From the IMG/VR virus record IMGVR_UViG_3300046703_000335, positions 124,001-188,000 of that record: a stretch of DNA of 64,000 nt; one strand, given 5' to 3'. Positions within the stretch are counted from its first letter, which is position 1. Each line of letters begins with the position of its first letter. The position numbers and the translations under genes were made by a program. Positions 47,101 through 64,000 of the stretch are shown piece by piece. Below the pieces are notes generated by a model that did no database searches, was not told where the DNA came from, and saw only the letters and a list, made by a program, of their open reading frames with translations.

Positions 47101-48296
47101 TCGAGGTTATTCCGGAGAACACTCATATTAAGATCATTTTTCTGCAAAAATTCTTTTAATTTAGAAATGTCTTCTTCCTGGAGCACCATTCCTTTTGACA
47201 AACGATTCATTTCGATATTCGTAATCTTAAGAAGTTCGCTCATCTGTTCATTACCGGGTTTATGCGTAAGAGCAAGTGTACAATATTTTACTACACTGTC
47301 ATATTCTTTTCTGTTGTAATAAATAAGAGCCAGTTTAGCTGCTGGAATAAATCCATAATAGTCAATTATCTGAGACATTCCTCCTTCAAGCTTTTTATTA
47401 AGAGCTTCTTTATAATATGATACTGCGGTGTCTGTATCATTCTCTTGCTCAAAGATATTTCCAAGAACCACGTAATTCTCAGCATAAATGCTATTGAATC
47501 TAATACCTTTTAGTGCATAATTTTTTGATGAGGAATAATCAGATTTTTCAAAATAGTATCTTGATAATTTTATACATGCTGTAGTAAGATTATCCGCAAA
47601 ATCAGCCCCCTTTTTTATATACGGATCAAGTACCGATATTGCTTTTTCCCACATTCCAAAATCAGCCAGTTCTTTACCATAATAAAATTTTATTCGCTCT
47701 GAACAATCTCCCGTTTCATATACTTTTTTGAGAGCCTCTATATTGCGAGCGGGATTATGTACTCTAACCCTATAATGATCAATATTGATATTTTCCCGAT
47801 GTAATCTATTGGGGGGGACATCCAAATTCATATACTCGTGTATGGGGTCATGCCATTTTATATGCTCACAATTTTTTACTATTCTTTCTCTAGGGAGAAT
47901 TAGTACTGGAGCATCCTTCTCATCATGGCTATATACGTAGTTAAGAATTATAATATCCCAAGCACTTATCTTTGGCTTCAATACCTGCAGTCTCATATAC
48001 TCTGAAGGCCTCAAAACATCGTCAGAGTCTAACCACATGATATATTGAGATGTATTATTACTAAAAGAGAAGTTTCTCGCAGCTGAGAAATCAGAAATCC
48101 ATTTAAAGAAAAATGTCTTAGCACCATAACTTTCAGCTAAAGACTTTATCTCTGGGTCCTCTTTTTCCATAGCAAGAGTTATTACTATCTCGTCAAATAG
48201 TTCACCTTGACAACTTTTAAGACATCTATCTAAAACATCCTTATCATCAGGACCTACAATAATATTCAAACCCAATAAAGGGGTGCGTATACTCAT
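44175..48296 (-). CDS. Multi-domain glycosyltransferase (GT2-TPR-GT4-GT2-GT4)
   Basis: GT2 #1: DFSAARNFSF, WLDSDD, PIHE. TPRs. GT-B #1: KSSVKATVAMALGLPVL. GT2 #2: DIIIANYN, ILNSDVIV, EDLDL. GT-B #2: YSSSPDRGL, YPSWFSETFCITA. Confidence 0.9.
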   Translation of the reverse strand: MSIRTPLLGLNIIVGPDDKDVLDRCLKSCQGELFDEIVITLAMEKEDPEIKSLAESYGAKTFFFKWISDFSAARNFSFSNNTSQYIMWLDSDDVLRPSEYMRLQVLKPKISAWDIIILNYVYSHDEKDAPVLILPRERIVKNCEHIKWHDPIHEYMNLDVPPNRLHRENINIDHYRVRVHNPARNIEALKKVYETGDCSERIKFYYGKELADFGMWEKAISVLDPYIKKGADFADNLTTACIKLSRYYFEKSDYSSSKNYALKGIRFNSIYAENYVVLGNIFEQENDTDTAVSYYKEALNKKLEGGMSQIIDYYGFIPAAKLALIYYNRKEYDSVVKYCTLALTHKPGNEQMSELLKITNIEMNRLSKGMVLQEEDISKLKEFLQKNDLNMSVLRNNLDFCDIRLNKIRDIKIVWFIPTLDLTNPSIRLRRFNICQQLVDMGIDSTIISNYYGNNIYETRNKVGDATVAIFTQFGKEDLEIMKHLKSSDIKCVFDHCEALFNFPFERECMEEVDLITCCSTKLKEITNEHGFMKTVVLKDAVEKTSDKAVYENRYLKPKAVYVGMGGNSWLVNEYLKDTIEEAGYEIVLCTEWDNATHRWTEEGWVDVMNACDVVLCPQRVEVQPAKSSVKATVAMALGLPVLCSPLQAYKEIIKDGENGFICDTKEEWKNALIKLKDSTVRKKIGEAGKASIGEYSLPVIASQWISTLTELINNQMKFPDPPEKIDVKNRSIVDIIIANYNNVEYLKMCVSSILMNTLYPFHIIISDGGSNKETWDYLLTLKGITVIGDPNKRLSFSETCNAGIKASNTKYFVILNSDVIVSKCWLTSLVNKMETVDRLASCGVLSNCDRGWLHDAPGKPSYSMLLEKSKIDLHPAMKIDEIKPYVEELYKFMEYSNKKHKDVFVRQGWVAAYATIFARCAINEVSLFDPLFLNGCEDLDLMNRLSKFGYVTGQAIDSFVFHYGGISRGAYQEENRESYNKEDAENHMKYRAKWNKPRVVIWTGPAWEPWNKQKVDEGMAGSETWASYLAREFVKKGFETTIYNDLLSDSKDDIVLDPVFDNVGEKVGDVVYRDHTKMQADVEYDVIDYFIASRSTEPLKLNIHSLRNYIIFHDIWLSPDKSYDIMTWRVDKYAYLSEWHKEFIMSHHGIISDKMFLTANGQDFSLYSDVDKYKKKNQAVYSSSPDRGLYQLLKMVPQIRKEIPDFELVVAYGFFNWESMARMRKDVEGLKFIADIKNLMNQPGVKYVDRVSKKQLAEYEKESKIWLYPSWFSETFCITAVAAGLSKCSIVSTDFAGLQTTVGSAGILLSPDGLSRNGEYPTSYVNRFVAEAIRMLSDESYRLMWADRAYAKMKEYNWGKIADGWLKEFGIK

Positions 48297-52244: not shown

Positions 52245-53525
52245 TTATATATTCAATGGTAACTTTTTTTCATTATCCCTATCTTTACCATTAGAAAATA
52301 CTATATTATTTACTTTAAACGTCTTACCTTTAAAAGTCTCATCCCCTATAAAATTGTCCATGGAATCTTTTTTAACATATGCTATAGTAACATGGGGATT
52401 GTATGTCGGGAATGTGCTTTCATTTTTTATCTTTTTTACGAGATTATAATACAATTTCTCAAGATCTCCAGATTCTACTTCAATCTTAAGAACATCATAT
52501 TCTTTTTTATCCTTAAATGCATTAATCAAACCAAGGCGTACTTCAAAAGGTTTAATTTCTCCAATAATCTTTGCAGTCCTTATAGGAGAATCATCTGTAA
52601 TCCCATAAAGCACTGTTACATGAATATCATCCTCTCGACCTTTTGAATTATCCCCTTCTACATATAATTTATTACCTGGTACATTATCCTTACCCCATTT
52701 TATAATTGACTTAGATAAGGCATCCGGTAAATTGATTTTAGTACACGAATACTCATACTTCACTCCGGTTTTTGCAACTTTTGTACGTACATCAACGTAG
52801 GTACTAGAAGGAACATCATAAGTGAAGATAATTGATTCTGGATTGCGATTAGAAAATGTTTTTTTTACATGTTCAATATCTTTATAATTCTTAAGAAATG
52901 CCAAAGAGTTATCCGGATCAGAGAGACTTTTAATACTAAATGTGTTAAATCCTGTAGTAGCTTCACCATACTTTGGAATTCTTATAGTCTTACCAGAGAA
53001 AATATCATTCACTACTTTTGGGATGGAATCCGTATCCAGGCGTTCAAATTTAAAATCTATAGCCCTTGAGGTACCTTTATCTGGAGATACGAAAGGCATA
53101 GCCATTTTTGAAAGTGTATTCGCGCACTTTCTTATTTTTGAGCTAATACTTTTCAAATTTTTTTCCTTTAGTTTATTTAAAAACTTTTTTACACTGTCGA
53201 TACTGTCAAATTCCTTGACTATGCCACTACGCCTACCTATAAGTTCAAGAAATTTCTTTTCCCTATCTGATTGGTTACCGCCATTATAGAAAATAACATA
53301 ATCTGAATTTATCATCCCAGCTATTTCTTTATAAGTATTCTTTGCTGGATCATAATTATTATCAAAAGGGTCTAATAGGTATAAGTCTCCTCCAAACTCT
53401 TTCTCGATTTCTTTACGCCAACTGTTATTCTGACAGTCTCCACCAAGAAAAATAACAGGGGTACCAGATTTTGGAGCGTTAACAATATCTTTATCAGATA
53501 AATAGGATGTAATTAAACGAATCAT
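52245..53525 (-). CDS. Nucleoside-2-deoxyribosyltransferase-like domain fused to an Acb1/gp57B-like 2H phosphoesterase
   Basis: N-terminal IFLGG...SWR...DPF...E...SDYVIFY. C-terminal YEYSC...GREDDIHVTVLYG...YNPHVTIAY (two HxT motifs). Confidence 0.75.
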   Translation of the reverse strand: MIRLITSYLSDKDIVNAPKSGTPVIFLGGDCQNNSWRKEIEKEFGGDLYLLDPFDNNYDPAKNTYKEIAGMINSDYVIFYNGGNQSDREKKFLELIGRRSGIVKEFDSIDSVKKFLNKLKEKNLKSISSKIRKCANTLSKMAMPFVSPDKGTSRAIDFKFERLDTDSIPKVVNDIFSGKTIRIPKYGEATTGFNTFSIKSLSDPDNSLAFLKNYKDIEHVKKTFSNRNPESIIFTYDVPSSTYVDVRTKVAKTGVKYEYSCTKINLPDALSKSIIKWGKDNVPGNKLYVEGDNSKGREDDIHVTVLYGITDDSPIRTAKIIGEIKPFEVRLGLINAFKDKKEYDVLKIEVESGDLEKLYYNLVKKIKNESTFPTYNPHVTIAYVKKDSMDNFIGDETFKGKTFKVNNIVFSNGKDRDNEKKLPLNI

Positions 53526-53725
53526 ATTCTAAGTAATTCTCGTGATAGTTCTCTAATAATATCTGAAGCGCACTTTTTCTTTTTATCCTTATCTCTCCAC
53601 ATACCTAAACATTGAGCGATACTTTGATCTCTATCCTTGTTTTCAATGCGGACACATTGATGCATACAATCACCCATAAATTTTTGCTTGTCTCCATCAT
53701 ATTTGTTAGGATCAGGCATCATCAT
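53522..53725 (-). CDS. Small Cys-containing phage protein
   Basis: KQKFMGDCM...DQSIAQCLGMWR, followed by KKCASDIIRELSREL. Confidence 0.6.
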   Translation of the reverse strand: MMMPDPNKYDGDKQKFMGDCMHQCVRIENKDRDQSIAQCLGMWRDKDKKKKCASDIIRELSRELLRI

Positions 53726-53973
53726 TCCCCTGTCTTAAGTAAATCACTATCAGTAGTCTTCTTATTTTCCGAAAAAGATTGGGCTGCTTTCGCACCTAAA
53801 ACTCCAGCAATCAAAAGTGCTTCTGATGTCCCTAACGAAATAAAACCTCCACCCTTTATCATAGAAACAATATTATGTGCAGCAAAAACTATCATAATAG
53901 TTATACATACTACAAAAGACATCAAACGCATCATACTAATTTTTCCATCAGGACCAGTGAACAAACTACTCAT
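53722..53973 (-). CDS. Small two-TM membrane protein (holin-like)
   Basis: KISMMRLMSFVVCITIMIVF...LLIAGVLGAKAAQ with a charged C-terminus. Confidence 0.5.
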   Translation of the reverse strand: MSSLFTGPDGKISMMRLMSFVVCITIMIVFAAHNIVSMIKGGGFISLGTSEALLIAGVLGAKAAQSFSENKKTTDSDLLKTGE

Positions 53974-53995: not shown

Positions 53996-54580
53996 TTACT
54001 CTGAAACTGCTTTTGTATATTCATCCATAGCAATTTTTAATTTTTTCACTAATAAAGTATATCCTCGCTTTTTCAAACAATCCTTAATATATGATAGTCT
54101 CTCAGCTGGATAACGTACTTCATCTATCTTTTTTGAAGAAATATTACGGGATGCTTCTTTACTTTTTGCATATTCTATTAAAGGTCTCATCTGTGCTTTT
54201 ACATCAGGAGTAGCTTTATTATATGGACCAATCAAACGCTCTTCTCTCATAGCCCCTGTTTCAACCATATCCTCAATTTCTTTTTTAGGAACTAATCTCT
54301 TACCATCCCACATCATCAACTCTTCTTTACCAGTAGAAGAATTCAGTTCAATAACAAATTCTCCCTTTTCATACGGTTTGATATTAGGATCAGTAGGCTC
54401 ATGAAAAGTTTTACCAGGTGTTCTATCACTCAATAATCGTGGACTATGCTTGGTTTCCCCAAAAAAAGGATACCCAGTAAGAGTCGCTTCCTTAATAGCT
54501 TTTAGCTCAGAAGCTTCTTTACTAAAACCACGTTCATTAAGAATATCAGAAATCTTATTTAGTCTACTTAAGATACTCAT
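53996..54580 (-). CDS. Probable internal head protein
   Basis: N-terminus RLNKISDILNERGFSKEASEL, shared with 55398..56156. KEA sites. Confidence 0.55.
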   Translation of the reverse strand: MSILSRLNKISDILNERGFSKEASELKAIKEATLTGYPFFGETKHSPRLLSDRTPGKTFHEPTDPNIKPYEKGEFVIELNSSTGKEELMMWDGKRLVPKKEIEDMVETGAMREERLIGPYNKATPDVKAQMRPLIEYAKSKEASRNISSKKIDEVRYPAERLSYIKDCLKKRGYTLLVKKLKIAMDEYTKAVSE

Positions 54581-55296
54581 TATTTACCACCTTTAAGATA
54601 TTTCTTTAAAAGCTTATCAAAATACGCTATTTTATCCTTTGGTAAGTAGCTTTTAGCTCCTCCAAGATAATATGAAAAGCTATCCGCCCAATCCTCCCAA
54701 GGGGATCTTTTTGCATAGAATCTTGTGAATCTAGCATATGGTGAATAATAATAATCTCCTATTACTTCAGGAGTACCTTTTTCATTAATATGTATTCTTT
54801 TAAGTCCTGGTTTTGGATATTTTGACCAACCAGATAATTCCTGCCAATCTTTTTTAAGAGATAGATCCCCATCTTCTCCCTGTGCTTCATCCCACCCATG
54901 ACCAAGCTCATGATAAAGAGTTTGATCAAATTTATTTATTATAGACCCATTATCAGGATCTATAATTAACTTGGGGTCATTAAGCAATTGATCATTCATG
55001 ATAAGAGTATTATTAACATATTTACCATGATTCGGATAGTATTCCTTGGAGGGACCTAAGTCATCAAATGATAAAGATTTTATACCACACATCTTTACAA
55101 TTTCTGGAGATATTCTCTGAAGGCTACTATATAATGCCTGGATACACTCAGGATTAGTTTTTCTATCTACATTAATACCATAAATTTCTTTGATACCAGA
55201 AAACAAATCAGAGTTACGACTATGTTCTTCTAAATCAGCCGCAATTCTCCGTAGACGAAAAATAAGTTCTATTGGTGTACTTTTTATAGTCATCAT
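54580..55296 (-). CDS. Zincin-type metallopeptidase
   Basis: YHELGHGWD (HExxH) and downstream YA..SPWEDWADSF. Confidence 0.75.
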   Translation of the reverse strand: MMTIKSTPIELIFRLRRIAADLEEHSRNSDLFSGIKEIYGINVDRKTNPECIQALYSSLQRISPEIVKMCGIKSLSFDDLGPSKEYYPNHGKYVNNTLIMNDQLLNDPKLIIDPDNGSIINKFDQTLYHELGHGWDEAQGEDGDLSLKKDWQELSGWSKYPKPGLKRIHINEKGTPEVIGDYYYSPYARFTRFYAKRSPWEDWADSFSYYLGGAKSYLPKDKIAYFDKLLKKYLKGGK

Positions 55297-55310
55297 TACA
55301 CTAAAAAAAA

Positions 55311-55326
55311 TATTAATGTATTATTA
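55311..55326 (-). promoter_or_regulatory. Putative late promoter motif
   Basis: Minus strand TAATAATACATTAATA, just after a terminator. Confidence 0.5.
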
Positions 55327-55332
55327 TTTAAT

Positions 55333-55363
55333 AAAAAAGGTATTGGGCTACATACCCAATACC
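55333..55363 (-). terminator. Rho-independent terminator
   Basis: GGTATTGGG/CCCAATACC stem plus T6 on the minus strand. Confidence 0.75.
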
Positions 55364-55397
55364 CTTATTAATATCTTACTATTCCTAAAAAATGAAT

Positions 55398-56156
55398 TTA
55401 ACTATTATGTGGTAAATTAGATCTATCTGTTTTTACCATTGGAGCATTAGGGGTAAAAGGAATTTCACCTGATCGGACTAACTTATCACGAAGACTCACA
55501 CCACCATGCATAATATCCCCTTCTAATTTCTTCTTACCATCAGTATAAGTAATCAATCGAGCGGTATTACCAAATGCATCCTTTAGTTCTTCAACATTTT
55601 TTACAGTTTTATCAGCTTGTCCAGGTTTTCGAGAATTTTGTGCATCATCTACATTTACGCTATCCTGAAAACGAGACTTATGATGCTCAGCTTCTTGTTT
55701 ATGATAATTCTCCATAACTATCGCAAAACTTTTAGGATCCCCTTTTTCAAGTTGTCTCAAATCCTTAGCAGTATAAGTAACTGTGCCTCCCTGAGGAGCC
55801 TTAACTGTAATGGGGCTACCTTTTGCTTCTACCTGAGAAAGAAATGAAGAAGCAAGTACCATAGCTAACATAGCCAAGGATCTTATCTTAGGACTAACAC
55901 CCATAGCTTCCTTATCCCCTATACCCTCTGTAGAAGGCGTATTCAAGTATTTCGCAACAATCTCAGCAGCATTCTGGGGATTAAGCGTAATACCTACCTC
56001 ACGTGCCAATTGAACTGCTTCAGGGGGGAAAGTAGTCATGGCTTCCAAAGATTCAGAAATCTTATCAATTTCATAAGCTTCTTTTAAATACCCATGAGAC
56101 TCTACTGAATCAGCAATTTTATCAAGAGCTTTAGCTATCTTCAAAAATTCACACAT
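55398..56156 (-). CDS. Probable internal head protein with an internal signal-peptide-like segment
   Basis: LDKIADSVESHGYLKEAYEI N-terminus. KEA-MGVSPKIRSLAMLAMVLASSFLSQVEA at residues 82-111. Confidence 0.6.
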   Translation of the reverse strand: MCEFLKIAKALDKIADSVESHGYLKEAYEIDKISESLEAMTTFPPEAVQLAREVGITLNPQNAAEIVAKYLNTPSTEGIGDKEAMGVSPKIRSLAMLAMVLASSFLSQVEAKGSPITVKAPQGGTVTYTAKDLRQLEKGDPKSFAIVMENYHKQEAEHHKSRFQDSVNVDDAQNSRKPGQADKTVKNVEELKDAFGNTARLITYTDGKKKLEGDIMHGGVSLRDKLVRSGEIPFTPNAPMVKTDRSNLPHNS

Positions 56157-56215
56157 ACTATCTCCACCTTCTATAGTGATTCAATAAACATACACGTCAT
56201 ATCCCTTATACGCGA

Positions 56216-56231
56216 TATTAATAGACTATTA
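56216..56231 (-). promoter_or_regulatory. Putative late promoter motif
   Basis: Minus strand TAATAGTCTATTAATA. Confidence 0.55.
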
Positions 56232-56248
56232 ATTTTTTAATAACCTTG

Positions 56249-56277
56249 TTGTTATGCTCATTCTAAACCAGTATATT
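56249..56277 (+). promoter_or_regulatory. Sigma70-type promoter
   Basis: TTGTTA-17 nt-TATATT upstream of an AAGGAG RBS and ATG 56307. Confidence 0.5.
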
Positions 56278-56306
56278 ATTAATAGACACACTAACAAGGA
56301 GACTTT

Positions 56307-56813
56307 ATGTTGAATAAGAAACTAATAATCATGTTGACCGTAATTTTAATGTCAGTAATTAATATCTCTGCAAAAAATATCCTCAGCATCTATGATAGTC
56401 ATAAAAAGCTATATACCAGCAAGTCACTGAACCCTGCTTATATTGGACCTCTATTTGCCACTGGGGGAGCCATGACAGACATTAACCGGTATATCAACAA
56501 TATGGCACCAGAGAAGATTGGGCATTTCACCAGTAATACTTTAGTTCTTATTGAAACAGACACCCTCCTAAATCAGGTGTATACATTTAATAAAGTGACA
56601 GCCTATAATGTGACAAAAGATACCAATAGCTTTAATATAATGCACATAGTTGGTACTCTGGGGGGAGAAAAGTATGATATAATTGTAGAAATAAAAGAGG
56701 GACCAGAGTATGATCGGATCATCACGATCTATAAGAATCTTAAACCTATAACAATAATTTTGTGGTTAGATAATTCAAAAATTACTCAGAAGAAAGCTCC
56801 TACTACTATCTAA
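56307..56813 (+). CDS. Exported protein (moron-like)
   Basis: Signal peptide MLNKKLIIMLTVILMSVINISA. Opposite strand, with its own promoter and terminator. Confidence 0.7.
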   Translation: MLNKKLIIMLTVILMSVINISAKNILSIYDSHKKLYTSKSLNPAYIGPLFATGGAMTDINRYINNMAPEKIGHFTSNTLVLIETDTLLNQVYTFNKVTAYNVTKDTNSFNIMHIVGTLGGEKYDIIVEIKEGPEYDRIITIYKNLKPITIILWLDNSKITQKKAPTTI

Positions 56814-56827
56814 CATCATATAGCAGT

Positions 56828-56869
56828 AAAGGCTCCTGGTACAAAACAACCTGTACCAGGAGCCTTTTT
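56828..56869. terminator. Bidirectional terminator between convergent genes
   Basis: 16-bp perfect stem AAAGGCTCCTGGTACA/TGTACCAGGAGCCTTT. Confidence 0.85.
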
Positions 56870-56883
56870 AATACACTATCCGT

Positions 56884-59466
56884 TTACATAAACTCTTTTA
56901 AGAATCTTCCATGATCAGCAGCAATAGGAGCTACTTTGAAAAGTTCTTCTTTTAGCGAAGCATATTTCTTACCAGCATTAAACAATCGCTTCATCTTAAG
57001 AGTATAATTATTTCCTCGAATCTTCCCATACTCATAGAAGGACAGAGCTTTATTCTGTGCGAGGCATTCTTTAAAATACTCTGACACTATTATAGTAGGA
57101 GTCTCAGCCTGATATTGTGGTATCATCCCACAGGCTTCTATAAACTTATTCCAACTACCATAATAGTGCTCAATAACATGTGAGGGTGCCCCCAAAATTG
57201 ATTTTTCACGATAGGTCTCTCGAGACATCCCTAATTTTAAGCTAACTTCTTTAAACTTATTCTGGATTGTATTCTCGTCAAAAGATACCGAAAAAGCTCT
57301 TTTATTTACTTCATGTGGAGCATCAGTGCACTTTATAATATTATCATAACTGTTTTTTAAGTTAACCCAGTTAATCGAGTCCTTAACATGTCTGGAAAAC
57401 AACAAGATAACTTCATAACTGTCTGAGGTAGTCACATGCTTAAAAGGTATTCTCAACACTTTAAATAACTTATACCCTAAATTACTACATGTGTTTATTG
57501 ATCTTTCAATAAGGGGAACTTTTTGGTTGGGGCTATAACAGACACCGAATACTCCATCCTCCCTCAAGGATTTAATACAACCTTTTACAGTAGCATCCCA
57601 ATACTGAGTCAACCAATCGGAAAGTTCTGGAAATCTATTGATACTTTGAGATTCTTCATTAGAATAGCTTTCATAATCAAAGTATGGTGGTGATGAAAAT
57701 GCTAATCCAAAATAATTCGTGTAAGGGATATCAACTTCAGAGCCCTTATTGTGTACACAATAATTTCCCCCTAAGTTAGCTTTTACAAATGCTCCGAAAT
57801 TTAATAGATTTTCATATGTTATAGTATTAGGCTCAAAACCTACATACTCCATACCTAAAGACATTGCTGCCAGCATCCTTGAACCAAAACCAGCAGAATA
57901 ATCTAATACCTTACCATTTTTACAAAAGTTGGCATATATATACCTAGCTATTGAGGGCTTAAAGTTACTTACAACAGTATTCATTAACTTTAGCCCTTTA
58001 CGCATTGAAGAATCATTTATTCTATCTGCGTACCTCAACCTATTCTCTACTAACTTTTTAAAAAAAGTCTCATCAACCCATACATCTATAGGTGCTGGAT
58101 AACCTTTACGTTTACTGCTATATATATTCGGAAAAAACTTCTCGCATAATTCCATCCCAGAGGTGTTAAAGCTTAAGAGATCGCCATCACATGTTGAAAT
58201 CCCGTTGTCTTTAAAGCTCCTTAACAAATAAAGAGCCCTACTGTCTGATATGTCTGAAAATGGAAAAGGTTTCCCCCAATATTGCTCAAAAGTCATATTA
58301 AACATCCGGGCCTTCATAACATCATTACCTACCCTATAAAATTTAGGATGTACCATTAATGGGGTTAAGGTATTAACCTTATCGGGGATTAAGAACTCTT
58401 CAGGTATCTTATATAGGACATCCGGAGTGGCTACTTGATATACAATATCAAAAAATTCCTTATAAAATTTTTTAGAAAAACTTATCCCACTTTTATAAAG
58501 CTGAAAACCCCACCCCAACTTATTCTCTAAAAAATCAACAAAAGCACTTAGTTGTTCCTTTATAGGGCAATAATTATTAATTATAAGAAATCGAGAATCA
58601 TCATCGTAATAACCATCATCTATAAACCAATAGGCCAATATTCTTTCATCCCAGTACTCTGAAATTAAGTCTATTGGAATTAGCTTACCTTCAACACCCT
58701 CTTTATAAAAAGATTCTCTAAACTTTGAGAAATGTTCACTCTGAATTGTTGCAAAACGTAACCCTGTTCCGTTATCACAGGGGTAGCAATTAGTGGAATA
58801 AGGTTCTAAAAGTTTATGTTTTAAACGAAGGTACTGCTCTTGTTTTAATGAGTGACTCTCATAATATCTTGGAGAAGAATCTATTCCACCATCCCCAAGT
58901 AGACCACCAATAATTAAGACAATCTGATTATGTGTTAAAGGAGGAGACTGCTTCTGTGTTTTTAATAAAATCCCTTTATCTTGTATTATAGGTCTCCAAG
59001 TAGTTTTTGAAACACCATATTTAGAAGAAAATTCTTCTTGTGTTAATTCATAATAATCTTTTTCAAGAACTTCTTTTGGAGTCTGTATGACTCTTTCTTT
59101 TTGTATATCATTAACTTTTATAGATATCCCAAGATTCAATTTCTTCCTTCTATATGCTACACCCTCTCCAGACATCTTAAAAAGTTTGCCAATATTTGAA
59201 TCTGTTTTTCCTTCAGCGTGCAAGGTTCTCAAGATATCATCAGTGAGTTTATTCTTAAGATCTTTTCGTATACCCTCATACACCACAGTAATTTTCGAGT
59301 TATATGCCCCTCTACTATCCGAAGTAATACCATAGGTTTTCATTCGCTTAAAGATTGCATCTTCTGAGACACCAAAAATTCCACCTATAGCTTTTGCAGT
59401 AAAACCAAAATCGCAATATAGCCTTTTTATGGATTCCATATTTAATTCTTCGATAGTATACTGCAT
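56884..59466 (-). CDS. HTH repeats + LAGLIDADG endonuclease + amino-DNA methyltransferase (N4C/N6A) fusion
   Basis: LAGLIDADG motifs IIGGLLGDGG and LAYWFIDDG. MTase motifs VLDYSAGFGSRM and FSSPPYF. C-terminal YYGSWNKFIEACG (homing-endonuclease-associated repeat). Confidence 0.85.
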   Translation of the reverse strand: MQYTIEELNMESIKRLYCDFGFTAKAIGGIFGVSEDAIFKRMKTYGITSDSRGAYNSKITVVYEGIRKDLKNKLTDDILRTLHAEGKTDSNIGKLFKMSGEGVAYRRKKLNLGISIKVNDIQKERVIQTPKEVLEKDYYELTQEEFSSKYGVSKTTWRPIIQDKGILLKTQKQSPPLTHNQIVLIIGGLLGDGGIDSSPRYYESHSLKQEQYLRLKHKLLEPYSTNCYPCDNGTGLRFATIQSEHFSKFRESFYKEGVEGKLIPIDLISEYWDERILAYWFIDDGYYDDDSRFLIINNYCPIKEQLSAFVDFLENKLGWGFQLYKSGISFSKKFYKEFFDIVYQVATPDVLYKIPEEFLIPDKVNTLTPLMVHPKFYRVGNDVMKARMFNMTFEQYWGKPFPFSDISDSRALYLLRSFKDNGISTCDGDLLSFNTSGMELCEKFFPNIYSSKRKGYPAPIDVWVDETFFKKLVENRLRYADRINDSSMRKGLKLMNTVVSNFKPSIARYIYANFCKNGKVLDYSAGFGSRMLAAMSLGMEYVGFEPNTITYENLLNFGAFVKANLGGNYCVHNKGSEVDIPYTNYFGLAFSSPPYFDYESYSNEESQSINRFPELSDWLTQYWDATVKGCIKSLREDGVFGVCYSPNQKVPLIERSINTCSNLGYKLFKVLRIPFKHVTTSDSYEVILLFSRHVKDSINWVNLKNSYDNIIKCTDAPHEVNKRAFSVSFDENTIQNKFKEVSLKLGMSRETYREKSILGAPSHVIEHYYGSWNKFIEACGMIPQYQAETPTIIVSEYFKECLAQNKALSFYEYGKIRGNNYTLKMKRLFNAGKKYASLKEELFKVAPIAADHGRFLKEFM

Positions 59467-59553
59467 CTTATTCCCCCTATTATGTAAATTATTAAGTAAG
59501 TATACTATATTTTACGCCAATAATCCATAAATTTTAGATCCTTATGCACAAAT

Positions 59554-59586
59554 AAAAAAGGATTGGTAATTTTACTTACCAATCCT
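59554..59586 (-). terminator. Terminator after major capsid gene
   Basis: AGGATTGGTAA/TTACCAATCCT stem plus T-run on the minus strand. Confidence 0.8.
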
Positions 59587-59650
59587 AAAATGATAACCTG
59601 ATGTTTTACTTTAAGGTAGTATGTAAACACACTACCTTTACAGTTGAAAA

Positions 59651-61660
59651 TTAGCGAGCTATCTTAACCCTTGTAATTGCCAATGGGTTATGGCACCCAA
59701 TACCTAAATTTTCGAAGACTGAAAATCCTATTCTTCTTGCCTTTGGATCATCAGCAGATAGTACTGTAAGTTCGGTACGTACAGGAATGCGCCCGAAAAA
59801 TTCTGGTTCTGCGCAAACATAAGCATAACCAGGATTAACTTTTCTGCTGACGATGATCTGAGCACCCCAAACGGTACCAAGTAGACCACTCTTAAGCAAT
59901 GTCCCTTGAGTTTCAATATCAAGAACGTCTCTTCCCCATTTTCTTAAATCTGCAAAGTCAAGAGCGTTCATGAAAATACGAGCAACTCGAAGATCATGAG
60001 TCTCAATACGTGCAAAAGCGTCAATCAAGTTTGCAGGTGTAAGAGGAGCAACAGCATTGATCTGTGCGTTTACATATGCACTTCCAAGATTGTCAAAACC
60101 AAACTGAGAAACTGCATCCATAACATCAAAGGCACGTGCATCTTCAGCAGCTTGAATTTGAGCTTTTGCCAAATCCTGTGCGCGTTCGATAAGGTCAAAA
60201 CGACGTTCTTTGATCTGTGTCAAAGGCAGTTCAGGATTCGATGCTATTTCGAAAAGAGGGAATATCACACGGCGAGGTTTTGTGATCGCCAGAATGTTTT
60301 CACCTTCTTCTCCGACAACGAAAGCAGTGACGTTAGGATCTTTGTCGTAAATTGGCAGCGCACCATCAGGGAGCTGTTCTACGAGAAAAGCCTTACGTGC
60401 AACTGACGTATAATCTCTGCGAAGACGCAGAGGCTGGATCCACTTTGTTACTACCCTATTTAAGGGCGTATGAGTCTTTCAACTCATATCTCATGGTTAC
60501 CCATGAGTTCAGACTGTATCACTACCTGTTATATACAGGTACTCGGCATGTCTTGACAAATTACTCTGTCAAGGTAGGTCTTATCGCCATTACCAAAACT
60601 TGGTATTAGGCTTCCCTCAGTCGTTGAACCTTCAATGGGGTTTCCCCCAAAGCTTGGCTGCTGATTGTCCTTTGAACGATATCTCTTAGGTAACTTATAG
60701 ATCAAATCATTAGTAATATTATCACGGATATACTCATAAGCAGTATCTCTTGATTCCTTCAAAACCCTAATATGGCATTCACCATCAGAGTTCTCAGTAA
60801 CACTTACAACCAGGTTTAAAACATCCTTAAAGATATCTATAACCAGTTCTTTGTTGTTTTTGAAAAAGCTATCATAAGACACTATAGTAAACCCGTAATC
60901 ACCAACCGCCCCATCATCCATCCACCAAAAAGACAACCCTACACCAGTAAGTTCACTTAGTAGTTCAGCACTCAGTACCTTTGTACCTTCAGGATAAAAC
61001 TTTTTTCTTAACTCTGTAAATTGATGCAAGGCATAACTCCTTGCATCAACATATGAAAAAAGTTCTCCACCGGATATAAAAGCTCTTTCACCATAAAATA
61101 CTTTAGCAGTAAAAAGGCTTCATTATCTCTGCTTTTCTAAGCAATAGTTGCTCTTGTTTCACACTATGCCTACAAAGCCAATATCCAGTCCCAGATGATT
61201 GTACTGCAATGCAGGAATCCCCAAACAAACTCCCATGCAGAAATTCTTTCTGATAGCTATTTAACGGAACCAATCTTAATGCGTTACGATTCAAATGATA
61301 GCCCTTATTTGTACTAATACCATAGATACTTCTTAAGGTACAAACTACTCTATCAGTTAAACCATATTTTTCACCTATCTCAATATCGCATAAACCAGCA
61401 TTGATGTACTCTTCAACAAGCACATCTTCCGGCAAAACACTTATAAGTCTTGCCAGTTTCTCTTCGCTGATTATTACGTTATTGATCTTCATACCTACCC
61501 ATCGTTCAAAGGATGTTCCAGACAATTTACCGAGTTTTACGTCCACCATCCAGAATCAATTAATGGACGCCGCTAACTTTGCACGGCCAGAAGCAGTCTT
61601 AATGTAATCTCCAATGATCTGTTGTTTCAGTTCATTAGTGATTGTGTTTGTTCCTTCCAT
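59651..61660 (-). CDS. Major capsid protein (HK97 fold), spliced: exon 1 61660-61563 joined to exon 2 60440-59651, 295 aa
   Basis: AGGAGG RBS. Exon 1 MEGTNTITNELKQQIIGDYIKTASGRAKLAAS + AT|G joins in frame to IQPLRLRRDYTSVARKAFLVEQLPDGALPIYD...GEEGE...IGFSVFENLGIGCHNPLAITRVKI. Follows the scaffold and decoration genes. Confidence 0.9.
60441..61562 (-). mobile_element. Group I intron (1122 nt) in the major capsid gene
   Basis: 5' exon ends in U (GTCCAT) pairing with IGS GTGGAC. IGS CTGGAT pairs with 3' exon ATCCAG (P10). P AAATTGTCTGGAA, Q AATCAGCAG, R TTCAACGACT, S GATACAGTCT. P3 ACTCGGT/GCCGAGT. Terminal omega-G. Confidence 0.93.
60529..61492 (-). pseudogene. Intron-encoded LAGLIDADG homing endonuclease with a 1-nt frameshift
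   Basis: LHGSLFGDS lies in 61103..61549 and LSFWWMDDG in 60529..61029. Removing one T from the T5 run at 61111-61115 gives a continuous 320-aa ORF (...MKPFTAKVFYGERAF...ALHQFTELRKKFY...). Confidence 0.8.
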
Positions 61661-61739
61661 TTCACTTCCTCCTAAAAAAATAAGTTTTCTGCGTGTCTAC
61701 TATATCATATTATGGATTATTTTCACGGCTAACGATTAA

Positions 61740-62318
61740 TTAGATCGAAAGCTGAACAACCATAAATGGATCAGTTGCACTTGGAGCAATCAATACGATA
61801 CCAACTACGAAAGCTGCAACATCAACAGCTGTACTAACAGCATTGCTGAGCAAGCCATTCTGAGAAACATAAAGTCTTGCACCAGGAAGATATGTGATAG
61901 GAACTCCGGCACCAGCCTGAGTACATGTCTCATACATATCTGTTGAGAAAACGGTACCTGTTCCATGTAAATATGGGCATTTACCACTTGCTACACCAGA
62001 GCTTGACTCGAAAGGATAACCAACAGCGTTATTAATCGCAACACCAACTGGGCGACCAACAAGAACTGATGGAGCTGCATCTGTACCTGTACATGCTACG
62101 ACTGTTCCGTTCACTGTTCCAACACATACAAACTGACCTGCAAGAATACCCTTAGGTGTGTCAGCACTAAGACGAGAATTCGCCAAAGATTGAACATTTG
62201 CACCGTAGTTATCTCTTGTCAGTCCAGCCGCTGTCAGATTCATGAGAGTATTCATTGTCACGCGATTGAGGATATTTAGGCCTCTATCAGGGGCAATTCC
62301 ACTTCCTTCACCAACCAT
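61740..62318 (-). CDS. Capsid decoration/cement protein
   Basis: Between scaffold and MCP. Beta-tulip-like pattern (ASGKCPYLHG, YLPGARLYVSQNGLL, VVGIVL). Confidence 0.65.
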   Translation of the reverse strand: MVGEGSGIAPDRGLNILNRVTMNTLMNLTAAGLTRDNYGANVQSLANSRLSADTPKGILAGQFVCVGTVNGTVVACTGTDAAPSVLVGRPVGVAINNAVGYPFESSSGVASGKCPYLHGTGTVFSTDMYETCTQAGAGVPITYLPGARLYVSQNGLLSNAVSTAVDVAAFVVGIVLIAPSATDPFMVVQLSI

Positions 62319-62439
62319 GTTAAACCTCCTATTAAATGAAACCCAATCCCCTTATGGGGCGGGTAGATACTGTTAAAAATCTTATATCGATCTTTTTACT
62401 ACTGATACCCCTCTAATAAAGTGGGGTATCGAATATCAC

Positions 62440-63447
62440 TTAATTAAAAATTTCTCTTACATCCGGAGCAGTAGACCATAGACTTGATAAGTCACTGGAA
62501 CCACTTGAAGAAGCTTCTTTCTTAACCATACCGGAAAGTTTTGAAGCACCCTTCTTGATAGGAGAAGGCATAACACCACTGAAAATCTGATCAAGAAGAC
62601 TTGCATCTTTTGATGAGCCTTCTTCTTCATCTTCTTCTTTTTTATCCTTGGAGGAAGCTTCGACTTCTTCTTCATCTTCTTCTTTTTTGGCAGAAGCTTC
62701 GACTTCTTCTTCGTCTTTGCCTACTTCTTTTTCAAGCTCTTCAGCTTGCTTTTTCAGGCTGGCAAGTTTTTCTTTTTTCTTTTTAATGTCCAGATCCTTA
62801 GTGCCGGCTTCTTTTTCTTTCTTATCATCTTCGTCTTTGTCGGCAGAGGCATCCTTCTCTTCTTTATCCTTATCATCTTCATCTTTGTCAGCAGAAGCAT
62901 CCTTCTCTTCTTTATCCTTGTCATCTTCATCTTTGTCAGCAGAAGCATCCTTCTCTTCATCTTCTTCATCAGAAGAATCAGAAGCAGCTTTTGCGATCAT
63001 CTGAGCGAGACCTTCTTGGTTTGCAAGAGTCGCATTAAGGCCCTCTTCAGGAAGATGCATAAGAATACCCGCCTGCTTCTCGATAATCTCGTCTGTAGCA
63101 CCAGGAAGCATTCTCTGTGAAGCAATAATAGCTTTGACAGCTTTCTCTTCAAGTCTACGAGCACTTGCGATAGCTTCTTGAGCAGCATGTTTATCAATAA
63201 GAGGAGCATGACCAGTCTCTTCACGTTTCTGATCATCTTTATTTACTTTGTCTTTATTAACGCCTTCATTCCATGCTTCAGGATCACCCTTAGCATATTC
63301 ACCGACACTTGGATTATTCTTGCTGTGTCCAGTATCATTCATATCAAAAACATCATTGTCAATTCCAGAACCCTTATCTTCAACTTGGGCACCTGGTTTT
63401 GACTTCATATCCGAAGCTAATCTGTTAGTCAAACGATTACGAGACAT
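62440..63447 (-). CDS. Capsid scaffolding protein
   Basis: Highly charged, disordered/coiled-coil, upstream of decoration and MCP. Many K-x-A sites. Confidence 0.7.
   Translation of the reverse strand: MSRNRLTNRLASDMKSKPGAQVEDKGSGIDNDVFDMNDTGHSKNNPSVGEYAKGDPEAWNEGVNKDKVNKDDQKREETGHAPLIDKHAAQEAIASARRLEEKAVKAIIASQRMLPGATDEIIEKQAGILMHLPEEGLNATLANQEGLAQMIAKAASDSSDEEDEEKDASADKDEDDKDKEEKDASADKDEDDKDKEEKDASADKDEDDKKEKEAGTKDLDIKKKKEKLASLKKQAEELEKEVGKDEEEVEASAKKEEDEEEVEASSKDKKEEDEEEGSSKDASLLDQIFSGVMPSPIKKGASKLSGMVKKEASSSGSSDLSSLWSTAPDVREIFN
62822..62958. repeat. 48-nt tandem repeat (EEKDASADKDEDDKDK, about 3 copies) in scaffold
   Basis: Near-identical DNA units visible directly. Confidence 0.85.
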
Positions 63448-63544: not shown

Positions 63545-64000
63545 TTACTCTTCAAATTGAGATAAAATCTTAGCCCATGAAGCTAACTTTTTACACTCTC
63601 TCTGACTTGGCTTGCGACCTATCTCAACTATCATCTTTGTGAAAAAGGGCACCATTCCTGTTGATCCAAGTTTGACTCTGGATAAAGTCTTAACTGCATC
63701 TGTACCAACAGGGATATTAGAAGCATTCTTATCTATAAAGTGCAATATCCCTAAAACATCATCACGAGTGTACCCATACTTTTTAAATTGTTTCCAATTC
63801 TTAGTATTAGATAAAATCATAATACCATTGTACAGCCGATCATTTTTTGTATCTCTTGCAGAAGCTAAAATCTTTTTAAAACTAGCGGACTTGTTCACTA
63901 AGTTATCATTTGTAGAAGTCTCTTCATCCGAAGGACGTCCACTATCTCCGCCATCTTGCTTAGCCTGATCCTTCATGATCTCTCTACGAATCTGATTAAG
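63545..64000 (-). CDS. C-terminal part of a head-morphogenesis protein (possibly the prohead protease), 5'-truncated
   Basis: Frame open to the window edge (LNQIRREIMKD...). Identity inferred only from its position upstream of the scaffold. Confidence 0.45.
   Translation of the reverse strand, partial: LNQIRREIMKDQAKQDGGDSGRPSDEETSTNDNLVNKSASFKKILASARDTKNDRLYNGIMILSNTKNWKQFKKYGYTRDDVLGILHFIDKNASNIPVGTDAVKTLSRVKLGSTGMVPFFTKMIVEIGRKPSQRECKKLASWAKILSQFEE

What the first reader, a model, noticed from the sequence alone, without database searches (positions are those of the whole stretch)
55398..56156. Cryptic Sec signal peptide exposed by predicted K-E-A cleavage
Seen: after KEA (residues 82-84) comes MGVSPKIRSLAMLAMVLASSFLSQVEA-K, with a basic n-region, hydrophobic h-region and V-x-A cleavage site. 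Inference: a two-address protein, packaged via its N-terminal helix, unmasked by the prohead protease and then exported by the next host (superinfection exclusion or envelope repair). Alternative: internal translation start at Met85, since GGGGATAAGGAAG lies upstream.
Basis: partly seen in the sequence, partly recalled or inferred. Interest (0 to 1): 0.65.

Follow-up and report, generated by a model that had tools for sequence, protein, structure and literature searches.

The report
Huge-phage exported protein, internal signal peptide
A 252-residue protein of an uncultured peat huge phage has a conserved Sec-type signal peptide starting at residue 85, behind a conserved cytoplasmic domain; it is most likely exported in the infected cell together with a co-inherited secreted partner, not packaged and re-exported in the next host.

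Summary
The ORF at window 55398-56156 (minus strand) encodes 252 aa, with KEA at residues 82-84. Residues 85-111 look like a signal peptide: two basic residues, a 13-residue hydrophobic core, and V-E-A before K112.

One such pattern is not rare by chance. Conservation is what makes it meaningful:
- All 27 full-architecture relatives keep the segment, with Ala at -1.
- Four distant short relatives (135-181 aa) carry the same C-terminal domain directly behind an ordinary N-terminal signal or lipobox. The domain is therefore extracytoplasmic.

The N-terminal 84 codons are under purifying selection (dN/dS 0.05-0.23). One clade has no start codon at the Met85 position. An internal start is therefore not the family's design.

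A divergently transcribed 168-aa secreted protein is the only neighbour kept in otherwise unrelated huge-phage contexts.

The packaging and unmasking story is not supported:
- An internal signal needs no unmasking.
- One clade lacks the N-terminal hairpin and lies outside the head module.
- The hairpin is absent from phage G, Tunturi_5 and two other huge phages.

Cleavage at K-E-A remains untested (EA in 24 of 27, KEA in 20 of 27). The function is unknown.

Verdict: a new orphan family and a variant of an ordinary Sec-exported protein. Interest is moderate.

The parts
55398..56156 (-). Target gene, 252 codons plus stop (P0001).
   Evidence: ORF list and translation. 18 word-search homologs and more by profile and locus scans.
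56162..56169 (-). Shine-Dalgarno-like GGTGGAG, 5 nt upstream of the annotated ATG (56154-56156).
   Evidence: Upstream sequence CACTATAGAAGGTGGAGATAGT-ATG. The spacing falls within the genome norm of 5-9 nt.
56031..56156 (-). Residues 1-42: helical hairpin (H2-20, H24-39). The motif is L-D-x-I-A-x-x-L-E-x-x-G...E-A-x-x-L-D-x-V/I-S/A-x-x-L-E.
   Evidence: AF2 model. The motif is shared with four other ORFs of the same contig and with 4 ORFs of relative G002. Its only PDB similarity is to designed antiparallel coiled coils. dN/dS is 0.13-0.23.
55941..56030 (-). Residues 43-72: two-helix unit FPPEAxQLARELGITLNPQNAAEIVxKYLN. This is the part of the N-domain kept in all clades.
   Evidence: Alignments A1 and A4 and the locus translations. 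AF2 helices 45-53 and 60-70. dN/dS is 0.05-0.12.
55905..55940 (-). Residues 73-84: low-confidence linker of variable length, ending in K82-E83-A84 (55905-55913).
   Evidence: pLDDT is below 50 at residues 77-82. K82 and A84 are at least 90% conserved in A1. Across the family EA is present in 24 of 27 and KEA in 20 of 27.
55824..55904 (-). Residues 85-111: internal signal-peptide-like segment. n-region MGVSPKIR, h-core LAMLAMVLASSFL, c-region SQVEA, with the predicted signal peptidase I site between A111 and K112.
   Evidence: It aligns to the N-terminal signals of P0033-P0036.
55401..55823 (-). Residues 112-252: orphan alpha/beta domain. It consists of a beta-hairpin, a long helix, a 3-4 strand sheet with the core DxFGNxAxLITYxDGxKxLEGDIxHGGVSLR, and a disordered tail.
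   Evidence: Alignment A2 and AF2 models. No fold match in PDB, BFVD, VIA-wide or the ESM Atlas. No Pfam, PHROG or NCBIfam hit.
55336..55366 (-). Terminator-like hairpin (13-bp stem followed by TTTTTTATT), 32 nt after the stop codon.
   Evidence: Pattern scan. Fold energy -22.4 kcal/mol, z = -3.4. A comparable hairpin follows the homolog in L010, but none was found in L006 or L023.
56157..56306 (.). 150-bp divergent intergenic region between the target and the partner gene. It holds weak sigma-70-like matches on both strands.
   Evidence: 9 of 12 matches on each strand; not evidence of function.
56307..56813 (+). Partner gene: 168-aa protein with an N-terminal signal peptide (MLNKKLIIMLTVILMSVINISA|KN).
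   Evidence: It is the only neighbour conserved with the target in L006, L010, L011, L013, L021 and L023. Alignment A3. The family has 38 members, on many of the same contigs as the target family. Complex prediction gave weak support, 0.48 against a best control of 0.00.

Best explanation
P0001 is an envelope-directed accessory protein of a phage-G-like huge phage. Its Sec signal peptide lies behind a conserved cytoplasmic domain of about 84 residues.

Proposed mechanism in the infected (producing) cell:
1. The hydrophobic segment (residues 93-109) inserts N-in/C-out.
2. The N-terminal helical domain stays in the cytoplasm.
3. The 141-residue C-terminal domain is translocated.
4. Host signal peptidase I probably cuts at V-E-A(111)|K(112). 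The C-domain is released outside the membrane, where it acts with the co-inherited secreted 168-aa partner. The N-domain is left tethered by the signal peptide.

Shown: the conserved signal-like anatomy, homology of the C-domain to domains that sit behind ordinary N-terminal signals or a lipobox, purifying selection on the N-domain, and co-inheritance with a secreted partner.

Inferred: the topology, the cleavage, the time of action, binding to the partner, and the biological role. The role is probably an envelope function such as exclusion, envelope modification or lysis timing, but it is unknown.
For: - Anatomy and its conservation. Ala at -1 in 27 of 27, V/I/A/S at -3, two basic residues in the n-region, and a core of about 13 hydrophobic residues.
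- Exported domain: a profile of the C-domain finds P0033, P0034, P0035 and P0036 (E = 5e-14 to 7e-7 against 1.84 billion proteins). In these the domain starts at residue 30-58, directly behind an N-terminal signal, a lipobox (SITA|C) or a signal anchor.
- N-domain is translated and selected: dN/dS is 0.05-0.23 for codons 1-72. No start codon lies before the signal in the short-N clade.
- Partner: the divergent secreted ORF is the only conserved neighbour across unrelated contexts. Complex prediction gave weak support: score 0.48 against a best control of 0.00. That mark was reached by 58 of 80 solved complexes and 2 of 110 mismatched pairs, but scores of 0.60 or under are weak. Run agreement was at least 0% and partner pLDDT at least 67.
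- Own terminator-like hairpin.
Against: - No experiment exists, and no SignalP or TM predictor was available.
- The uncharged span is 14-21 residues, so an uncleaved anchor is not excluded.
- Lys at +1 and often at +3 after the predicted site is unfavourable for Sec export in E. coli (established knowledge). The host is unknown.
- Three things remain unexplained by plain export: the (K)EA motif conserved in an otherwise variable linker; the hairpin shared with other proteins, one of them encoded between portal and protease; and the position of the gene just after the capsid gene in this clade.
- No fold or family match suggests a function.
Confidence: 0.6

Rival explanations
1. Uncleaved signal anchor. 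The hydrophobic segment is a permanent transmembrane helix. The protein works as a bitopic N-in/C-out membrane protein that links an outside domain (with its secreted partner) to a cytoplasmic helical domain, with an architecture like RodZ, ToxR or anti-sigma factors.
For: - The uncharged span reaches 19-21 residues in several members.
- AF2 draws one continuous helix over residues 89-112.
- The conserved cytoplasmic two-helix unit 'LAxELGIxLTP..AAxIV' looks like a helix-turn-helix (resemblance only, with no Pfam hit).
- The topology follows from the exported relatives.
Against: - The strictly hydrophobic core is only about 13 residues.
- A simple sum over the best 19-mer is +2.4 to +6.8 kcal/mol on the Hessa scale, which is unfavourable for a stable helix.
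- Ala at -1 in 27 of 27 members and a small or aliphatic residue at -3, kept down to 28% identity, is hard to explain without signal peptidase.
Confidence: 0.25
2. The N-terminal helix carries the protein into the prohead. The prohead protease cuts at K-E-A and exposes the signal peptide. After ejection, the next host's Sec system exports the C-domain.
For: - In this clade the gene lies just downstream of the capsid gene, in a module that has a head maturation protease.
- The hairpin is shared with P0002 (two genes away) and with an ORF between portal and protease.
- (K)EA is conserved in a variable linker.
- KEA is concentrated in the scaffold-like protein and neighbouring head-module proteins.
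- Giant-phage prohead proteases are known to cut after Glu and to remove N-terminal propeptides (PMC10052503).
Against: - A signal at residue 85 is not masked. It would be captured by SRP or Sec in the producing cell (established knowledge).
- The short-N clade has no hairpin and lies outside the head module.
- The hairpin is absent from four related huge phages.
- Two other hairpin proteins sit near a tail fibre/epimerase and near ParB-like genes.
- The co-inherited secreted partner argues for export at the time of synthesis.
- KEA is missing in 7 of 27 members and EA in 3 of 27. In one lineage the KEA of the P0002 ortholog is replaced by KSS.
- No phage protein is known to me that is ejected and then exported by Sec. 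One literature search found none.
Confidence: 0.05
3. Internal initiation. In this phage Met85 is a second start, so an ordinary secreted pre-protein (residues 85-252) is made alongside or instead of the full-length form.
For: - TAAGGA lies 4 nt before the ATG.
- The six closest sequences all use AAG-GAA-GCx-ATG. They are related to each other, so they are not independent.
- 8 of 108 genes with an SD-like site in this contig also have a 4-nt spacing.
Against: - Codons 1-72 are under purifying selection in this frame.
- Position 85 is Leu in about half of the long-N members. The codon is TTA in L006, where an ATG follows two codons later. It is Lys or Gly in the short-N clade, with no nearby start codon.
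- K-E is AAR-GAR, so any K-E pair looks like a Shine-Dalgarno site.
- The spacing is shorter than the genome norm of 5-9 nt.
Confidence: 0.1
4. Membrane tether for head assembly. The cytoplasmic hairpin joins other hairpin-bearing proteins of the prohead core while the signal segment holds it at the membrane. Cleavage at (K)EA by the head protease frees the prohead, as proteolysis frees T4 and SPN3US proheads from the inner membrane.
For: - Antiparallel coiled-coil-like hairpin shared by five proteins.
- The (K)EA motif lies exactly between the cytoplasmic domain and the membrane segment.
- Head-module position in this clade.
- Prohead release from the membrane on proteolysis is described for SPN3US and T4 (PMC10052503).
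Against: - It does not explain the conserved exported domain, the signal peptidase motif or the secreted partner.
- The short-N clade lacks the hairpin and the head context.
- Nothing shows that the hairpin proteins are head proteins.
Confidence: 0.08

Closest known systems
Cleavable Sec (type I) signal peptides of bacterial and phage secreted proteins
   Same: Basic n-region, h-region of about 13 residues, small residues at -3 and -1, and an exported domain behind it. Short relatives of the same domain have exactly this at their N-terminus.
   Different: Here the signal starts at residue 85 (47-110 in relatives), behind a conserved, folded, selected domain rather than at the N-terminus.
Type II (N-in/C-out) bitopic membrane proteins with a cytoplasmic helical or HTH domain, such as RodZ, ToxR/CadC and anti-sigma factors
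   Same: The order of parts: a small cytoplasmic helical domain, a basic juxtamembrane stretch, one hydrophobic segment, then an outside domain.
   Different: No sequence or fold relation was found. The hydrophobic core is short, and it is followed by an invariant signal-peptidase-type motif.
Internal signal sequences of eukaryotic virus polyproteins (flavivirus C-prM, HCV core-E1) and bipartite organelle presequences (thylakoid lumen proteins, cytochrome b2/c1)
   Same: A cytoplasmic or capsid-side module, a possible protease site, an internal signal sequence, a signal peptidase site, then an exported module. The comparison rests on established knowledge and was not tested here.
   Different: Those are eukaryotic systems with demonstrated sequential cleavages. 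Here no cleavage is shown, and no phage precedent was found.
T4 capsid targeting sequence and giant-phage N-terminal propeptides removed by the prohead protease (T4 gp21, phiKZ gp175, SPN3US gp245)
   Same: An N-terminal element shared by several proteins of one phage. A Glu-containing motif follows it. The phage encodes a head maturation protease.
   Different: The specificity of this protease is unknown. The hairpin is about 40 residues and coiled-coil-like, not a 10-residue CTS. It is internal in one paralog (residues 100-142 of the 207-aa ORF). It is missing in one clade of the family and in related phages.
SAR (signal-anchor-release) domains of phage endolysins and of the T4 RI antiholin
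   Same: A weakly hydrophobic Ala/Ser/Gly-rich segment that resembles a signal peptide (LAALAALLAAGF in relatives), encoded in a phage, with an exported C-terminal domain (the comparison is from memory).
   Different: SAR domains are N-terminal, and release takes the whole protein into the periplasm. An 84-residue cytoplasmic domain would block that. There is no endolysin or holin relation.

Membership tests
Sec type I signal peptide | Positively charged n-region directly before the hydrophobic core | tested here: met
   P-K-I-R in P0001. The pattern P-[KR]-x-[KR], or an equivalent, is present in all 27 members.
Sec type I signal peptide | h-region of roughly 7-15 hydrophobic residues, shorter than a transmembrane helix | tested here: met
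   The core LAMLAMVLASSFL is 13 residues. The uncharged span is 14-21 residues across the family.
Sec type I signal peptide | Small uncharged residues at -3 and -1 of the cleavage site | tested here: met
   -1 is Ala in 27 of 27 and -3 is V/I/A/S, for example VEA|K, VAA|K, IQA|K, VQA|Q and AAA|Q.
Sec type I signal peptide | Located at the N-terminus of the precursor | tested here: not met
   It starts at residue 85 in P0001 and at about 47-110 in relatives. The preceding codons are under purifying selection.
Sec type I signal peptide | Actual export and cleavage by signal peptidase I | not testable with these tools
   This needs PhoA or beta-lactamase fusions and N-terminal sequencing. Indirect support: the same domain lies behind N-terminal signals in P0033-P0036.
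Lipoprotein (type II) signal peptide | Lipobox ending in Cys at +1 | tested here: not met
   There is no Cys after the hydrophobic core of P0001 or of any long-N member. Only the distant relative P0034 has one, SITA|C.
Tat signal peptide | Twin-arginine motif (S/T-R-R-x-F-L-K) | tested here: not met
   The n-region is K-I-R or K-x-R, and no member has RR.
Signal-anchor bitopic membrane protein | Hydrophobic segment long enough (about 18 residues or more) to span the membrane, and not cleaved | tested here: inconclusive
   The span is 14-21 uncharged residues, with polar S, N and Q inside. The simple hydrophobicity sum is unfavourable. No TM predictor was available.
Prohead-protease substrate with an N-terminal targeting propeptide (T4 or phiKZ type) | Conserved protease motif (Glu at P1) at the propeptide boundary | tested here: inconclusive
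   EA is present in 24 of 27 and KEA in 20 of 27, 7-9 residues before the n-region. Genome-wide KEA is observed 30 times against 17.2 expected. The specificity of this protease is unknown.
Prohead-protease substrate with an N-terminal targeting propeptide (T4 or phiKZ type) | Targeting element shared by head proteins and present wherever the protein is present | tested here: not met
   The hairpin is missing in the short-N clade and in G001, phage G, Tunturi_5 and LR745208.1. Two of the five carriers are encoded far from the head genes.
Prohead-protease substrate with an N-terminal targeting propeptide (T4 or phiKZ type) | Presence of the processed protein in virions | not testable with these tools
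   The phage is uncultured and comes from peat metagenomes. No proteome exists and no RNA run was found.
Spanin (i-spanin/o-spanin pair) | i-spanin with an N-terminal TM helix and a coiled-coil periplasmic domain, paired with an outer-membrane lipoprotein | tested here: not met
   The hydrophobic segment is internal. The C-domain is alpha/beta, not a coiled coil. The partner has a signal peptide without a lipobox in this phage. The pair is divergently transcribed.

The most novel reading that the evidence does not exclude
A phage 'mini-polyprotein' with an internal signal sequence that is processed from both sides. The head maturation protease cuts at (K)EA on the cytoplasmic face. This frees the hairpin domain for, or from, the prohead. 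Host signal peptidase cuts at V-x-A on the outer face and frees an envelope-acting domain.
Probability: 0.1. Interest if true: 0.8.

Novelty: new variant of a known kind. Interest (0 to 1): 0.4.

Why it matters
- Automatic annotation would miss this. Signal-peptide predictors look only at the N-terminus, so families like this are filed as cytoplasmic or as 'one TM helix' hypotheticals.
- The family and its secreted partner form a two-gene envelope cassette. It has moved between huge-phage genomes and is a candidate for exclusion, envelope remodelling or lysis control in phages that are otherwise almost unannotated.
- If signal peptidase really cuts behind a large cytoplasmic domain, this would be a clean natural case of an internal cleavable signal in a bacterial virus. 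It would also show a way of making a membrane-tethered cytoplasmic fragment and a free exported fragment from one gene.
- The shared hairpin and the (K)EA motif offer a testable handle on the unknown specificity of phage-G-type head proteases.

Tried and rejected
- Family scans of P0001, the partner, P0002, P0003 and the two small downstream ORFs gave nothing useful. Pfam, PHROGs and NCBIfam were used. P0003 had only a weak Peptidase_Mx hit.
- tblastn and megablast against 50,697 phage records found no match for P0001 or for the 20-kb region.
- Fold searches found nothing above background. The full model was searched with Foldseek against PDB and BFVD. The C-domain model was searched with VIA-wide (best Z 4.2) and the ESM Atlas (TM by query at most 0.33). 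The protein atlas feature search gave no usable hit. Sequence profiles against PDB chains found only designed coiled coils for the hairpin and insignificant FAN1 hits.
- Phage G gp28 and Tunturi_5 gp335, the genes after the capsid gene in those phages, show no evident resemblance on reading their translations. No pairwise comparison was run.
- My crude signal-pattern detector fired more often on shuffled proteins than on real ones. It is useless as a significance test and shows only that a lone pattern proves nothing.
- The hairpin HMM found no further carriers above a reversed-sequence control. The N-terminus of P0003 and the ORF at window 31918-32817 look similar by eye but do not score.
- Short contigs gave no context for P0033-P0035.
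- No RNA runs hold the locus.
- Rfam found no intron model in 55000-62500.
- The complex prediction for the C-domain and the partner gave only weak support (0.48 against controls of 0.00, with one of three runs at 0.00). It is not counted as evidence of binding.
- P0037 (624 aa, repeats, E = 9e-6) was set aside as a repeat artefact.
Full report
**What the window is**

The 64-kb window is positions 124001-188000 of a 210,408-bp IMG/VR virus record that CheckV rates 45% complete. GC content is 32-40%, there are no tRNAs, and nearly all genes are on the minus strand.

The C-terminal two thirds of the major capsid protein (window 59651-60268) match PHROG 2522. They are 70% identical to the 485-kb uncultured phage LR745208.1, 48% to Tunturiibacter phage Tunturi_5 and 42% to Bacillus phage G gp27. 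This is therefore a phage-G-like huge phage. Near-identical DNA occurs in peat metagenomes from several studies, and no RNA run holds it.

**The observation**

K82-E83-A84 is followed by MGVSPKIRSLAMLAMVLASSFLSQVEA and then K112, and GGGGATAAGGAAGCT precedes the Met85 codon. The annotated start has a good ribosome-binding site (GGTGGAG, 5 nt spacing).

A lone pattern of this kind is not rare. A crude detector hit 12 internal sites in 185 ORFs, and 19-35 in shuffled proteins. The case rests on comparative evidence.

**The family**

A word search found 18 homologs of 206-301 aa, none with a name or Pfam domain. Locus scans and a full HMMER search added more. All lie on phage-like contigs of up to 424 kb.

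The alignments and locus translations show five parts:
1. A helical hairpin, residues 1-42.
2. A two-helix unit, FPPEAxQLARELGITLNPQNAAEIVxKYLN, residues 43-72.
3. A linker of variable length, usually ending in K-E-A.
4. The signal-like segment.
5. A conserved C-terminal domain of about 125 residues, with the core DxFGNxAxLITYxDGxKxLEGDIxHGGVSLR.

AlphaFold models (pLDDT 75 for the whole protein, 68 for the C-domain) agree with this partition.

In all 27 members that have an N-terminal extension, the segment keeps these features:
- two basic residues (P-[KR]-x-[KR]);
- a hydrophobic core of about 13 residues;
- Ala at -1 and V/I/A/S at -3.

This is the classical (-3,-1) signature of signal peptidase I, held down to 28% identity.

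**The domain is an exported one**

The profile of the C-domain alone, searched against 1.84 billion representatives, found 16 proteins. Four of them are short (135-181 aa, E = 5e-14 to 7e-7). In these the domain begins at residue 30-58, directly after an ordinary N-terminal hydrophobic signal, a lipobox (P0034: MKVLTILIIALSITA|C) or a signal anchor. In a joint alignment, their N-terminal signals fall on the internal segment of P0001.

This is the strongest evidence that the segment is a real export signal and that residues 112-252 work outside the cytoplasm.

**The N-terminal extension is real protein**

Against three relatives (93, 86 and 78% identity), dN/dS is 0.13-0.23 for the hairpin and 0.05-0.12 for the two-helix unit. 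It is 0.01-0.05 for the C-domain.

Met85 is not conserved:
- It alternates with Leu in the long-N clade.
- The codon is TTA in L006.
- It is Lys or Gly in a 'short-N' clade (P0022, L010, L011, L020, L021, L023), where no start codon lies near.

In this genome the SD-like TAAGGA sits 4 nt from the ATG, whereas 78 of 108 SD-bearing genes have a spacing of 5-9 nt. A K-E dipeptide (AAR-GAR) looks like a Shine-Dalgarno site by its codons alone.

Internal initiation may occur in this phage, but it does not explain the architecture.

**Context**

In this clade the gene lies in the head module. The order is:
- portal (with an intein);
- three small ORFs;
- a 207-aa hairpin-bearing ORF;
- a 184-aa ORF;
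- head maturation protease (with an intein; it matches Tunturi_5 gp331 and phage G gp19);
- a 335-aa acidic scaffold-like protein;
- a 192-aa protein;
- the capsid gene.

After the capsid gene come a homing-endonuclease/methylase ORF, a divergent 168-aa ORF, the target, an HExxH protein and P0002.

In the short-N clade none of this is kept. In the 98%-complete 424-kb genome G001 the gene lies among RtcB ligase and methyltransferase-like genes.

The one neighbour retained everywhere is the divergently transcribed protein of about 165 aa with its own N-terminal signal peptide. Its family of 38 members occurs on many of the same contigs.

The target is followed by a terminator-like hairpin. A similar hairpin follows the L010 homolog, but none follows the homologs in L006 or L023.

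The target and partner therefore behave as a mobile two-gene cassette of envelope-directed proteins. A complex prediction for the C-domain and the mature partner gave only weak support (median 0.48, best control 0.00, one run at 0.00, partner pLDDT at least 67). I do not count it as evidence of binding.

**The hairpin and KEA**

The hairpin motif occurs in five ORFs of the contig:
- the target;
- P0002;
- the 207-aa ORF between portal and protease, where the motif is internal at residues 100-142;
- two small ORFs, one near a collagen-like tail fibre and an epimerase, the other near ParB-like genes.

It occurs four times in the related contig G002. It is absent from phage G, Tunturi_5, LR745208.1 and G001. 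Its only resemblance in the PDB is to designed antiparallel coiled coils. It is best read as an association module, lineage-specific rather than a general capsid address.

The KEA tripeptide is seen 30 times in 185 proteins, against 17.2 expected from per-protein shuffles. It clusters in P0002, the target, the 207-aa ORF and the scaffold-like protein (VKKEASSSG near its C-terminus). In the family, EA is present in 24 of 27 members and KEA in 20 of 27. In P0002 orthologs the KEA after the hairpin is kept in one lineage and replaced by KSS in another.

Giant-phage and T4 head proteases do cut after Glu and do remove N-terminal propeptides (PMC10052503). A protease site is therefore plausible, but the evidence is only suggestive.

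**Most likely mechanism**

An internal signal or anchor needs no unmasking. SRP and Sec recognise such segments wherever they lie (established knowledge of type II membrane proteins). The simplest reading is therefore:
1. The protein inserts N-in/C-out in the cell that makes it.
2. The N-domain stays cytoplasmic.
3. The C-domain is exported to join the partner.
4. The invariant A-x-A-type site is cut by host signal peptidase I.

I give this 0.6. The uncleaved-anchor variant gets 0.25.

Its export element is right, but the packaging and unmasking elements are contradicted by the short-N clade, by the partner, and by the lack of any need for unmasking.

Two observations remain unexplained by plain export: the (K)EA motif between the cytoplasmic domain and the membrane segment, and the hairpin shared with likely head-module proteins. 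They keep alive a dual-processing or membrane-tether reading at about 0.1.

**Function**

No family, fold or name gives a function. By analogy with other phage-encoded exported pairs, an envelope role is the best guess: exclusion, envelope modification or lysis timing. This is inference only.

**Limits**

- No signal-peptide or topology predictor was available.
- The host is unknown.
- Read laying was not used, because no RNA run holds the locus.

Noticed in passing
window 59654-61660 (minus strand): The major capsid gene is interrupted. Residues 1-33 map to 61660-61562 and residues 21-295 to 60478-59654. The insertion of about 1.1 kb between them carries a LAGLIDADG ORF (60529-61029) and a 148-aa ORF (61103-61549). 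The relative L004 has an intact 295-aa gene. Rfam found no intron model.
   Followed up: partly
window 56884-59466 (minus strand): An 860-aa ORF combines HTH/HNH-like N-terminal repeats, a LAGLIDADG_2 endonuclease domain and an N6/N4 methyltransferase-like domain. It sits between the capsid gene and the target pair, and it is absent at this place in L004.
   Followed up: no
G000 187545-190397 (its 3' end is window 63545-64000) and G000 192812-196237 or beyond: The head maturation protease and the portal protein each carry an intein (Hint plus LAGLIDADG_3 domains). Together with the split capsid gene, three core head genes are invaded by selfish elements.
   Followed up: partly
window 52245-53525 (minus strand): A 426-aa protein has a weak nucleoside 2-deoxyribosyltransferase-like N-terminal part and a 2H phosphoesterase / Acb1-like C-terminal domain (Pfam 2_5_RNA_ligase2 at 3e-7, Acb1 at 3.5e-6). 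It is a candidate anti-CBASS nuclease, and its position is conserved in relatives.
   Followed up: no
window 54580-55296 (minus strand): A 238-aa HExxH protein (HELGHGWD, with EDWADSF further on; weak Peptidase_Mx hit) lies immediately downstream of the target. It is 64-73% identical in L006 and L013. It may be a zinc peptidase of unknown role in the head-proximal module.
   Followed up: no
window 53996-54580; G000 17929-18411, 64015-64395 and 190992-191615: A helical-hairpin motif of about 40 residues (LDxIAxxLExxG...EAxxLDxVSxxLE) is shared by five otherwise unrelated small proteins of this phage and four of a relative. It is absent from phage G, Tunturi_5, LR745208.1 and a 424-kb relative. 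In the 207-aa ORF it follows a zinc ribbon and a Lys/Asp-rich stretch.
   Followed up: partly
window 62440-63447 (minus strand): A 335-aa protein rich in Asp, Glu and Lys lies between the protease and the capsid gene. It is probably the scaffold. It has K-E-A-S just before a conserved C-terminal tail (VKKEASSSGSSDLSS...). KEAS recurs in P0002, in the 207-aa hairpin ORF and in two other proteins.
   Followed up: partly
window 53722-53973 and 53522-53725 (minus strand): An 83-aa protein with two hydrophobic segments (holin-like in shape) and a 67-aa four-Cys protein are conserved in order downstream of P0002 in relatives. No family match.
   Followed up: no
window 1-9111 and 44175-48296 (minus strand): A giant ORF runs off the window (over 3037 aa in the window, 3401 aa in the contig). 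A 1373-aa protein combines TPR repeats with GT1, GT2 and GT4 glycosyltransferase domains.
   Followed up: no
window 38695-40830 (plus strand): One of the few plus-strand genes encodes homing-endonuclease-like repeats fused to a Mom-like DNA modification domain (PHROG 1384).
   Followed up: no
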